Position numbers and translations under genes: made by a program. This document shows, in pieces, positions 28,148-29,564 of a stretch of DNA of 64,000 nt. Positions within the stretch are counted from its first letter, which is position 1. The number at the start of each line of letters is the position of its first letter. The notes under the pieces were generated by a model. That model made no database searches. It was given only the letters and a program-made list of their open reading frames with translations, and was not told where the DNA came from. This DNA comes from Salpingoeca rosetta (Eukaryota; Protista; Choanoflagellata), in contig JAWQFM010000001.1 of assembly GCA_033442325.1 (NCBI GenBank), positions 1,672,138 through 1,736,137 on the forward strand, given 5' to 3'.

Positions 28148-29080
28148 TTATGCCTTGAGGCTCTCGCGGAGCTTGGCAAGGGCGCGGGAGTCGGGCAGGG
28201 CCTGTGAAACAAGAAGAGCAAGCCGAGCAAGCAAAAGTCATAATGTGTGTGAGCGGATGCAAAGGGATCAGCAACAACAGTCCGTCGTGGCGGTGATGGT
28301 GAGGGTGAGGTGATTGGCAAACAACACAAAGAAATAAATATCGGGCAGGGGGAATGCAAAACGAGAAAAAGGGGAGAAGAAAGAAGAGGAGGAAGGGCGT
28401 GTTGAAACGCAAAGTAGGGGGAGAAAAGGGTTGCGCGTCGTTGGTTCAGACAACTAAGATTCCGGATTGAAGTTCTCCGCAGATGCTACACGCTTTTCGG
28501 CAGCCTCAGAAGAGGGAGCTTGAAGCCATTCTCATCAAGACCGTTCGCACTCGAGGAAAGCAAAACAAGAGTGGAAGTTGGGGGGGGGGAACGATGGAAG
28601 GAAGGAGGGGGAAAGGGAAACTGAGACAGAAGAAAGGGAAGAGGGGTAGGGGGTAAAAGAACGTAGCAGAGAAGGAAAGATGGATAAGGCGAGACAGGGA
28701 GGGTTGCGCGTCGTTGGTTCAGACAACTAAGATTCCGGATTGAAGTTCTCCGCAGATGCTACACGCTTTTCGGCAGCCTCAGAAGAGGGAGCTTGAAGCC
28801 ATTCTCATCAAGACCGTTCGCACTCGAGGAAAGCAAAACCAGAGTGGAAGTGGAAAGGGGGGAAACGATAGAAGGAAAAAGAAGTAGGGGGGGAGGGTTG
28901 TGGAGGGAAACAGCAGGGGAGGGGATGGCGAAGAAAAGGAGAAAGCAAGGAAGCAAGGGAGGAGGGGAGGAGGGTGCCAAGGCAAGGAAGAAATACAAAT
29001 GGCACCCAACAAAAGAGGAACACGCCAACCATCCAGAGACCTGCCAGCCACACACACACACACACACACACAAACAGAAG

Positions 29081-29114
<34 letters not shown>

Positions 29115-29564
29115 CACAAACAAACAAACAGAAGCACACAGCCATACACAAACAGAAGCACACAGCCACACACGAGCGCCGTCTGCACGAACCTTGACGG
29201 CGACGCAGCTGCACTTGACAACCTTGCGGGGGTTACCGTCCTTGTCAATCTTGCAGAGACCAGCCCACTCGCCGAGCTGCTTCTTGCTCTCGACGGTGAC
29301 GAAAGGAACCTTGCGCTCGGCGCAGAGGGCCTCGATGAGCTTGGTGATGTTCTTCTCGTCGCAGTCGTTGGCGACAACGGCGAAGATGGCGTCACCGCGG
29401 GAGATGGTCTTGGCCACCTCGCGCAGACCGCGGACGATGCCATCAGAATGCACGGCATCGCGAAGCACAAGGCGCAGAGCCTCCTCGTTGGTGAGCTCGG
29501 CCTCGACGGCAGGGGTCTCAACCTGCTCGGGGGTGGTGTCCATGGTCTGCTGCTCCTCAGCCAT
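28148..29564 (-). CDS. RPS12: 40S ribosomal protein S12 (eS12); join(29193-29564, 28148-28201)
   Basis: DGIVRGLREVAK...LGEWAGLCKIDKDGNPRKVVKCSCVAVK, then a GT...CAG intron and terminal exon ALPDSRALAKLRESLKA*. Confidence 0.97.
28443..28542 (-). ncRNA. Intronic box C/D snoRNA, SNORD100-like (18S Gm436-equivalent guide), copy A
   Basis: Minus strand: terminal GGT, box C TTGATGA (28538-28532), guide TCAAGCTCCCTCTT, box D' CTGA (28509-28506), box D CTGA (28449-28446), terminal ACC. The guide is complementary to conserved 18S AGAGGGAGC. Sense to the RPS12 host. Confidence 0.85.
28716..28815 (-). ncRNA. Intronic box C/D snoRNA, SNORD100-like, copy B (identical to copy A)
   Basis: Exact copy offset by 273 bp in the same RPS12 intron. 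Confidence 0.85.

What the first reader, a model, noticed from the sequence alone, without database searches (positions are those of the whole stretch)
28443..28815. SNORD100-like snoRNA nested in RPS12: host-gene/snoRNA pairing apparently shared with humans
Seen: box C (TTGATGA), D' and D (CTGA) boxes, a terminal GGT/ACC stem and the guide GCTCCCTCT one nucleotide before D', in the sense strand of the RPS12 intron. Known: eukaryotic 18S contains GATTCCGGAGAGGGAGCC. The D'+5 rule places methylation on the first G of GGG (human G436). From recall, human SNORD100 guides 18S Gm436 with the same D' guide and lies in an RPS12 intron. Inference: either a host relationship retained since before animals or convergent colonisation; snoRNAs usually switch hosts over such distances.
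Basis: partly seen in the sequence, partly recalled or inferred. Interest (0 to 1): 0.82.

Follow-up and report, generated by a model that had tools for sequence, protein, structure and literature searches.

The report
SNORD100-type snoRNA pair in RPS12 intron
The single coding intron of the ribosomal protein S12 gene of the choanoflagellate Salpingoeca rosetta carries two identical copies of a small guide RNA predicted to methylate one conserved G of 18S rRNA; the same RNA sits in exactly the same intron in another choanoflagellate, a sponge and a coral, so this gene/RNA partnership, already known within animals, is older than animals.

Summary
The given coordinates run from the end of one copy to the start of the other: two 100-nt box C/D snoRNAs on the minus strand (28815..28716 and 28542..28443), identical over 140 nt, in the spliced 991-nt intron of S. 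rosetta RPS12.

The D' guide pairs with the organism's own 18S and selects the first G of GGG, the human Gm436 equivalent. A second 9-nt element pairs with the adjacent 18S sequence, as published for human HBII-429 (SNORD100).

Rfam models do not reach threshold. A profile built without choanoflagellate sequences finds only these two copies (E about 1e-6).

An orthologue lies in the same phase-0 intron, after the CSCVxV(K/T) codon, in Monosiga, the sponge Corticium, the coral Acropora and two environmental contigs. It is absent from RPS12 of Capsaspora, Sphaeroforma and two fungi. In 27 of 120 metagenome loci with the motif, RPS12 exons flank it on the same strand, but in at least four different introns. 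Mouse Snord100 is in the neighbouring intron.

Retention since the choanoflagellate-animal ancestor is favoured. SNORD100 in RPS12 from sponges to vertebrates was published in 2012, so this is a modest extension. The mature RNA and the methylation are not shown.

The parts
29193..29564 (-). RPS12 (eS12) coding exon 1, 124 codons, ends ...CSCVAVK
   Evidence: ORF and translation; 100% identical to the protein named 40S ribosomal protein S12 [Salpingoeca rosetta]; high RNA depth
28202..29192 (-). Host intron, 991 nt, GT..AG, phase 0; the only intron in the coding sequence
   Evidence: Junction reads skipping 991 nt in three RNA runs and one spliced contig; boundaries read
28148..28201 (-). RPS12 coding exon 2 (17 codons + stop)
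   Evidence: 124+17 = 141 aa, the length of the database protein
28716..28815 (-). snoRNA copy A (upstream in the transcript): stem GGU 28815..28813, C box 28810..28805, guide 28792..28783, D' 28782..28779, candidate C' UGCGGA 28754..28749, extra 18S-pairing UCCGGAAUC 28739..28731, D box 28722..28719, stem ACC 28718..28716
28443..28542 (-). snoRNA copy B (downstream), identical to copy A; every element is copy A minus 273 nt (C box 28537..28532, guide 28519..28510, D' 28509..28506, extra pairing 28466..28458, D box 28449..28446)
28700..28839 (-). 140-nt block identical to 28427..28566, including an outer flanking stem GUGCG (28823..28819) / CGCGC (28710..28706) around copy A
28427..28566 (-). 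Second 140-nt identical block, around copy B

Best explanation
These are two functional copies of one intron-encoded box C/D snoRNA, the choanoflagellate orthologue of animal SNORD100 (HBII-429) and plant snoR30.

Inferred mechanism, from the established behaviour of the family. The RPS12 pre-mRNA is transcribed and spliced (shown). Snu13, Nop58, Nop56 and fibrillarin assemble on the C/D and C'/D' motifs. Exonucleases trim the excised intron down to the roughly 100-nt snoRNPs; a cut in the 173-nt spacer is needed to separate the two copies. The D' guide GCUCCCUCUU pairs with 18S 437-446, and fibrillarin 2'-O-methylates G441, the equivalent of human G436. The element UCCGGAAUC in the C'-D spacer pairs with 18S 430-438, immediately 5' of the guide duplex and overlapping it by 2 nt. 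It acts as the 'extra base-pairing' that stabilises short guide duplexes. The 8 nt next to box D have no rRNA target, so this is a single-site guide.

Evolution. The snoRNA already sat in the last coding intron of RPS12 (phase 0, after CSCVxVK) in the common ancestor of choanoflagellates and animals. It has been kept there in S. rosetta, Monosiga, a homoscleromorph sponge and a coral. It was duplicated locally in S. rosetta. It was moved to other RPS12 introns in bilaterians, and lost (or lost with its intron) in some lineages.
For: Anatomy and target complementarity:
- Boxes, stem and guide are as described.
- The terminal stem is in the canonical k-turn register. It covaries across 26 family members: 93 of 104 cells paired, against 49 +/- 4.7 in shuffles.

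Family identity:
- The best Rfam match is snoR30, of the SNORD100 clan, with 14 identical guide+D' bases.
- A profile built only from non-choanoflagellate members hits just these two sites in the window plus seven other loci, at E 8e-6 to 9e-7.
- A 9-nt perfect complement to the adjacent 18S segment had no equal in 102 control 18S windows. The same or a shifted complement occurs in Monosiga, Acropora, Corticium, fungal-type and other environmental members and in published sponge SNORD100s.
- HBII-429 is listed among human snoRNAs with conserved extra base-pairing, and a 1-2 nt overlap with the guide duplex is described as common.

Constraint:
- 0 differences in the 140-nt core against 10 in the 42 upstream columns (Fisher p = 1.7e-7).

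Host transcript and machinery:
- The host intron is transcribed on the sense strand and spliced.
- Fibrillarin is encoded in the genome.

Positional orthology:
- The intron lies immediately after the codon for K/T of CSCVxV(K/T), phase 0, in S. rosetta, Monosiga, Corticium and Acropora, and each carries the snoRNA.
- Environmental contigs L136 and L027 show the same.
- 27 of 120 metagenome loci with the motif have RPS12 exons, and all 27 are on the same strand.

Literature:
- SNORD100 lies in RPS12 from sponges to vertebrates, and sponge expression was verified.
- AtsnoR30 Gm390 corresponds to HBII-429 Gm436.
Against: - No direct evidence for a stable ~100-nt RNA. The three RNA runs are long-fragment libraries, intron depth is only 1-4% of exon depth with no peak over the copies, and reads in the duplicated part map twice.
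- No methylation data exist.
- Rfam gathering scores are not reached: 17.9 against 60 bits for snoR30, and no SNORD100 hit in the genome at E<=10.
- The terminal stem is only 3 bp, and C' is degenerate.
- The single-sequence fold is no more stable than shuffles (z = 0.48). This is usual for C/D snoRNAs.
- The Monosiga orthologue has a C.A mismatch in the guide and is not found by the leave-out profile.
- Retention is weakened by patchiness. A close relative of S. rosetta has the same intron (107 nt) without the snoRNA (L015). Two other choanoflagellate-like contigs lack the intron (L016, L021).
- Bilaterian copies sit in other introns, which shows that the snoRNA does move.
Confidence: 0.72

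Rival explanations
1. Convergence. A genuine SNORD100-type snoRNA entered RPS12 independently in choanoflagellates and in animals, because highly and constitutively expressed ribosomal-protein genes are favoured landing sites for mobile snoRNAs.
For: The snoRNA occupies at least four different RPS12 introns in different lineages: the first intron in Branchiostoma and one environmental type, about residue 44 in L141, about residue 79 in another type and (by inference) mammals, and the last intron elsewhere. It is absent from RPS12 in close relatives of S. rosetta and in Capsaspora, Sphaeroforma and two fungi. Hoeppner and Poole found no positional conservation of intronic snoRNAs at great depth and favour ongoing mobility.
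Against: Six independent sequences share the identical codon-level, phase-0 intron position: two choanoflagellates, a sponge, a coral and two environmental contigs. They also share detailed architecture, namely the same 9-mer UCCGGAAUC at 8-10 nt from box D, and the same C' variant UGCGGA in S. rosetta and Acropora. Independent insertion into one of about four introns of one gene among thousands, repeated several times, is far less parsimonious. Moves between introns of the same gene are explained by cis-duplication, which Perina et al. report in sponge ribosomal-protein genes; Suberites carries SNORD100a and b in RPS12.
Confidence: 0.18
2. Relic or chance. The two units are non-functional remnants (a recently duplicated dead snoRNA, or a chance set of short motifs) that are spliced out and degraded with the intron.
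For: No read peak over the units. Sub-threshold Rfam score. Weak 3-bp terminal stem and no thermodynamic signal.
Against: 0.00 matches expected by chance. The core is perfectly conserved while the flanks diverge. The guide and the extra-pairing element both match the organism's own 18S perfectly. Orthologues with covarying stems exist in many lineages. These are the only carriers of this guide in the genome.
Confidence: 0.05
3. Other role. The snoRNA is real, but its main role here is something other than rRNA methylation, for example coupling RPS12 splicing or expression to snoRNP assembly, or acting as an 18S folding chaperone through its 17-nt bipartite pairing.
For: The bipartite complementarity covers 18S 430-446 continuously, and the two duplexes overlap by 2 nt, so they may not form at the same time. 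Two copies in one intron is an unusual arrangement.
Against: The guide sits in the exact register for methylation by the D'+5 rule. The homologous site is recorded as methylated in plants and humans, with this family as its guide. Nothing in the data calls for another function.
Confidence: 0.05

Closest known systems
SNORD100 / HBII-429 (Rfam RF00609), animal box C/D snoRNA hosted in RPS12
   Same: Same D' guide and same predicted target, the first G of the conserved GGAGAGGGAGCC motif (human 18S Gm436). Same host gene. Extra base-pairing to 18S next to the target. Demosponge SNORD100s published by Perina et al. (Amphimedon, Suberites; one Suberites copy verified by cloning) have the same layout, including CCGGAAUC 10 nt before box D.
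   Different: About 100 nt long, against about 73-75 nt for the short RPS12-hosted environmental type (res-79 intron) that I take to be bilaterian. Not detected by the Rfam SNORD100 model. Two identical copies in one intron. It lies in the last coding intron, whereas mouse Snord100 is in intron 4 and the last intron (5) holds Snora33. Non-animal organism.
snoR30 / Z108 (Rfam RF00046), plant member of the same clan CL00073
   Same: Best Rfam match. The 14-nt guide+D' is identical to the model consensus. The homologous target is Arabidopsis 18S Gm390.
   Different: Score of 17.9 bits against a threshold of 60. The rest of the molecule does not align. The genomic context of plant snoR30 was not examined here.
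Extra base-pairing box C/D snoRNAs (van Nues et al. 2011, EMBO J 30:2420)
   Same: A conserved second antisense element pairs with rRNA immediately next to the methylation guide duplex and overlaps it by 1-2 nt. HBII-429 is on their list.
   Different: Their functional tests were on yeast snR75, snR76 and snR70. Nothing has been tested for this snoRNA.

Membership tests
Box C/D snoRNA | Box C (RUGAUGA) near the 5' end and box D (CUGA) near the 3' end | tested here: met
   UUGAUGA and CUGA in both copies; 0.00 combined-motif matches expected by chance
Box C/D snoRNA | Terminal stem bringing C and D together in k-turn register | tested here: met
   GGU/ACC, 3 bp directly flanking the 3-nt bulge, plus an outer GUGCG/CGCGC stem. 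The same register covaries in 26 homologues, 93/104 paired against 49 +/- 4.7 in shuffles
Box C/D snoRNA | Internal D' and C' boxes | tested here: inconclusive
   D' is a perfect CUGA. C' is only a degenerate UGCGGA, identical to the Acropora orthologue; divergent C' boxes are common
Box C/D snoRNA | Antisense guide of at least 9-10 nt ending next to D or D', with the target at the fifth position | tested here: met
   10 contiguous pairs with the organism's own 18S 437-446; position 5 faces G441
Box C/D snoRNA | Accumulates as a stable small RNA bound by fibrillarin, Nop56, Nop58 and Snu13 | not testable with these tools
   Only long-fragment RNA-seq was available, and the duplicated region maps ambiguously. 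A fibrillarin gene is present
SNORD100 / snoR30 clan (Rfam CL00073) | Reaches the Rfam gathering score of RF00609 or RF00046 | tested here: not met
   No hit at gathering score. snoR30 gives 17.9 bits against 60, E about 1. RF00609 gives no match at E<=10 in the genome. This is a curated model threshold, not a biological criterion
SNORD100 / snoR30 clan (Rfam CL00073) | Guide specifying the G equivalent to human 18S G436 / Arabidopsis G390 | tested here: met
   The guide+D' 14-mer is identical to the snoR30 consensus and to Corticium; published sponge SNORD100s differ only at the base next to D'. The target motif is identical in the organism's own 18S. Site equivalence is taken from the literature
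SNORD100 / snoR30 clan (Rfam CL00073) | Sequence similarity to family members beyond the guide | tested here: met
   nhmmer profiles built without any choanoflagellate sequence hit only the two copies, E 8e-6 and 9e-7. A profile of the family also recovered Branchiostoma and Acropora copies that were not used to build it
SNORD100 / snoR30 clan (Rfam CL00073) | Conserved extra base-pairing to 18S adjacent to the target (reported for HBII-429) | tested here: met
   UCCGGAAUC against 18S 430-438, with 0 of 102 control windows as good; literature
SNORD100 / snoR30 clan (Rfam CL00073) | 2'-O-methylation present at the target and dependent on the snoRNA | not testable with these tools
   No RiboMeth-seq or mutant data were available
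RPS12-hosted SNORD100 (Perina et al. 2012) | Located in the sense strand of an RPS12 intron | tested here: met
RPS12-hosted SNORD100 (Perina et al. 2012) | Same orthologous intron as in animals | tested here: met
   Same phase-0 position after CSCVxVK as in Corticium and Acropora. NOT the same intron as in mouse (intron 4 of 5) or Branchiostoma (first intron)

The most novel reading that the evidence does not exclude
The SNORD100 / last-RPS12-intron association dates to the common ancestor of choanoflagellates and animals. That would make it one of the deepest documented cases of an intronic snoRNA kept in one specific orthologous intron, and the first extending outside Metazoa. On this reading the snoRNA is what has preserved this intron in otherwise intron-losing RPS12 genes. 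The later hops to neighbouring introns proceeded through tandem or cis duplicates like the pair caught here.
Probability: 0.6. Interest if true: 0.55.

Novelty: new member of a known kind. Interest (0 to 1): 0.45.

Why it matters
Intronic snoRNAs are generally regarded as mobile. A 44-genome survey found no positional conservation at great depth and proposed 'constrained drift' (Hoeppner and Poole 2012). The RPS12/SNORD100 pairing was the clearest exception within animals (Perina et al. 2012). Showing that the pairing extends to the unicellular sister group of animals, down to the same codon-level intron position, gives a datable and experimentally tractable case of long-term snoRNA/host linkage, because S. 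rosetta can be genome-edited. It also gives a natural series of intermediates (tandem pair, neighbouring-intron copies, relocated copies) for studying how snoRNAs change introns without changing host. It adds a first annotated methylation guide with extra base-pairing for choanoflagellate rRNA. The increment over published work is modest.

Tried and rejected
- Rfam: nothing in the whole window at gathering threshold. Permissive thresholds gave only a sub-threshold snoR30 hit. RF00609 found nothing over the whole genome.
- A second methylation guide next to box D: no convincing complement in the 10-kb rDNA unit, so the snoRNA is treated as a single-site guide.
- The reading that UCCGGAAUC is a D guide for the equivalent of human Um428: rejected, because that pairing is 9-17 nt from box D, out of register for the +5 rule.
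- Read evidence for a mature small RNA: the libraries are unsuitable, and the apparent fragment ends at 28586 and 28859 coincide with the repeat boundaries, so they are mapping artefacts. No verdict.
- An LSU Rfam search of the genome failed. The SSU copy on contig C3 had no LSU within 10 kb, so the unit on contig C4 was used instead.
- Host genes of the non-RPS12 environmental homologues: ORF inspection gave nothing usable, and this was not pursued.
- L019 (Acropora-like) and L021 were intronless, probably transcripts or intron-poor genes, and uninformative for intron content.
- No human or other primate contig was fetched or compared. The mammalian intron assignment rests on literature plus inference.

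Full report
**What is there.**
The window comes from Salpingoeca rosetta. The exon translation is 100% identical to the database protein named 40S ribosomal protein S12 of that species, and the assembly is 55.4 Mb.

RPS12 lies on the minus strand:
- coding exon 1, 29564..29193, ending ...CSCVAVK;
- one GT..AG phase-0 intron of 991 nt, 29192..28202;
- exon 2, 28201..28148.

Three stranded RNA-seq runs give 3615, 1917 and 3187 reads across exactly this junction, and they place the RNA on the minus strand.

The intron holds two units 273 nt apart that are identical over 140 nt (28839..28700 and 28566..28427). There are 10 differences in the 42 aligned columns upstream, and similarity is lost within 12 nt downstream (Fisher p = 1.7e-7 for core against flank).

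**Anatomy of each ~100-nt unit (coordinates for copy A; copy B = minus 273).**
- Stem GGU (28815..28813), then a 3-nt bulge (C, U, and the first U of the box).
- Box C UGAUGA (28810..28805), then a 12-nt spacer.
- Guide GCUCCCUCUU (28792..28783).
- D' CUGA (28782..28779).
- A degenerate C' UGCGGA (28754..28749).
- UCCGGAAUC (28739..28731), then 8 nt.
- Box D CUGA (28722..28719).
- Stem ACC (28718..28716).
- An outer GUGCG/CGCGC helix in the flanks.

The combined C-guide-D' motif occurs twice in the window, with 0.00 expected from shuffles. The unit occurs nowhere else in the genome. None of the six other genomic guide+CUGA matches that were fetched (of nine) has a C box; three were not inspected.

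**Target.**
An Rfam-defined 18S copy contains GAUUCCGGAGAGGGAGCC at 430-447, and all 13 genomic occurrences of the motif are identical. The guide forms 10 contiguous pairs, one of them G-U, with 437-446. The fifth guide nucleotide upstream of D' faces G441, the first G of GGG.

The literature equates this site with human Gm436 (HBII-429/SNORD100) and Arabidopsis Gm390 (snoR30), both in Rfam clan CL00073.

UCCGGAAUC is a perfect complement of 18S 430-438. That segment abuts the guide duplex and overlaps it by 2 nt. No other of 102 control 18S windows matches the C'-D spacer as well. This is the 'extra base-pairing' of van Nues et al. 2011. They list HBII-429 among human snoRNAs with such a conserved element, and they note that 1-2 nt overlaps are common.

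The 8 nt next to box D have no rRNA complement.

**Family membership.**
Rfam finds nothing at gathering score. With permissive settings the best hit is snoR30, at 17.9 bits against 60 and E about 1, carried by 14 identical guide+D' bases. The SNORD100 model finds nothing in the genome.

I therefore built profiles from homologues found here. A profile of 31 sequences recovered Branchiostoma and Acropora copies that were not in it (E about 1e-7). Profiles that exclude both choanoflagellates hit only the two window copies among about 100 kb searched on both strands (E 8e-6 and 9e-7).

Across 26 homologues the terminal stem covaries in the canonical register: 93 of 104 cells paired, against 49 +/- 4.7 in shuffles.

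Demosponge SNORD100 sequences in Perina et al.'s Table S7, one of them verified experimentally, have the same layout, including CCGGAAUC about 10 nt before box D.

**Host gene and intron in other organisms.**
Carriers in the same intron as S. rosetta:
- Monosiga brevicollis RPS12 has its last intron right after CSCVAVT. Inside it is a unit with CGAUGA, guide GCCCCCUCUA-CUGA, C' UGACGA, UCCGGAAUC and CUGA (L014:4533-4620). Its guide has one C.A mismatch.
- The homoscleromorph sponge Corticium candelabrum (L018:5547-5639) carries an orthologue in the intron immediately after CSCVVVK, phase 0.
- The coral Acropora (L142:5173-5262) does the same.
- Environmental contigs L136 and L027 do likewise.

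Distances from box D to the 3' splice site are 73 nt in Corticium, 114 nt in Monosiga, 243 nt for S. rosetta copy B and 422 nt in Acropora.

Carriers in other RPS12 introns:
- A scan of metagenome contigs for C box + guide + D' returned 120 loci. 61 of them pass a D-box and stem filter. 27 carry RPS12 exons, always on the same strand.
- In those 27 the snoRNA sits in at least four different introns: the first intron, about residue 44, about residue 79, and the last intron.
- Branchiostoma has it in the first intron, with D' CUCA.
- Mouse Snord100 is in intron 4 and Snora33 in intron 5, with the ATG in exon 2. Perina's table gives human RPS12 four coding introns. Together these place the mammalian copy in the intron at about residue 79, next to the one used in S. 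rosetta. This mapping is my inference, and I did not fetch any human or primate sequence.

Not present in RPS12:
- Capsaspora, which has one intron near the start.
- Sphaeroforma.
- The fungi Gongronella and Blastocladiella.
- L015, a close relative of S. rosetta, keeps the intron (107 nt) without a snoRNA.
- L016 and L021 lack the intron.

**Interpretation.**
The element is almost certainly a genuine box C/D snoRNA guiding 2'-O-methylation of the G436-equivalent of 18S, helped by extra base-pairing.

Choanoflagellates, a sponge and a coral share the codon-level intron position and fine architecture: the same 9-mer at 8-10 nt from box D, and the same C' variant in S. rosetta and Acropora. This favours inheritance from the choanoflagellate-animal ancestor over independent colonisation.

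The different introns used in bilaterians fit duplication into neighbouring introns followed by loss. Perina et al. report such neighbouring-intron duplicates in sponge ribosomal-protein genes, and Suberites carries two SNORD100 copies (a and b) in RPS12. The S. rosetta pair is a tandem version of that process.

The association cannot be traced deeper than Choanozoa with these data, because the sampled filasterean, ichthyosporean and fungi lack the intron.

**Novelty.**
[quoted passage not shown] That paper used Monosiga RPS12 only for intron statistics and did not report a snoRNA there.

Searches of the paper library for snoRNAs in choanoflagellates found nothing relevant.

Another first-stage note of this scan (s1-442285) had flagged the two identical copies on the same stretch. 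That note agrees with what I found.

This is a new member of a known family, in a known host, one step outside animals.

**Limits.**
No mature small RNA and no methylation are shown. The taxa of the metagenome contigs are unknown, and many of them are not independent. The Monosiga guide mismatch is unexplained.

Noticed in passing
window 29037-29140 (minus strand: 5' part of the RPS12 intron): Long imperfect (TG)n/(CA)n microsatellite with interspersed GCTTCTGTTT units. RNA reads are cut there and depth drops to zero.
   Followed up: no
L142:3922-4005 (Acropora RPS12, intron between the exons for residues ~48-87 and ~80-107): A second, weak hit of the snoRNA profile (E 0.006). It may be a different box C/D snoRNA in a neighbouring RPS12 intron.
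   Followed up: no
L057, L074, L119, L137, L089, L101 (metagenome contigs): Tandem arrays of 2-6 SNORD100/snoR30-type units at about 300-430 nt spacing, in GC-rich, CT-repeat-rich DNA without RPS12 exons. All carry CCGGAAUC 7 nt before box D. They look like polycistronic snoRNA clusters of an unidentified eukaryote.
   Followed up: partly
L024, L050, L056, L054 (metagenome contigs): A longer (~100-115 nt) variant of the family. Its extra-pairing element is GAAUCGAACC(AA), complementary to 18S 423-434 instead of 430-438, and it is not linked to RPS12. I suspect a fungal origin, but this was not tested.
   Followed up: partly
G000:C3:1866861-1868969 (L010) versus G000:C4 (L009): The SSU rRNA copy on contig C3 scores 1582 bits but has no 5.8S or LSU within 10 kb downstream. 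The copy on C4 scores only 1252 bits and is followed by 5.8S and a partial LSU match. The 18S motif occurs on 13 contigs, so rDNA copies appear dispersed and heterogeneous in this assembly.
   Followed up: no
L015:2468-2574: An AT-rich close relative of S. rosetta (RPS12 about 78-85% identical) keeps the orthologous last intron, but it is only 107 nt with no snoRNA. Its 297-nt upstream intron contains C/D-like motifs that do not match this family.
   Followed up: partly
L023, L045, L079, L141: RPS12-hosted environmental homologues also occur as two diverged copies within one intron, so intra-intron duplication of this snoRNA is recurrent.
   Followed up: partly
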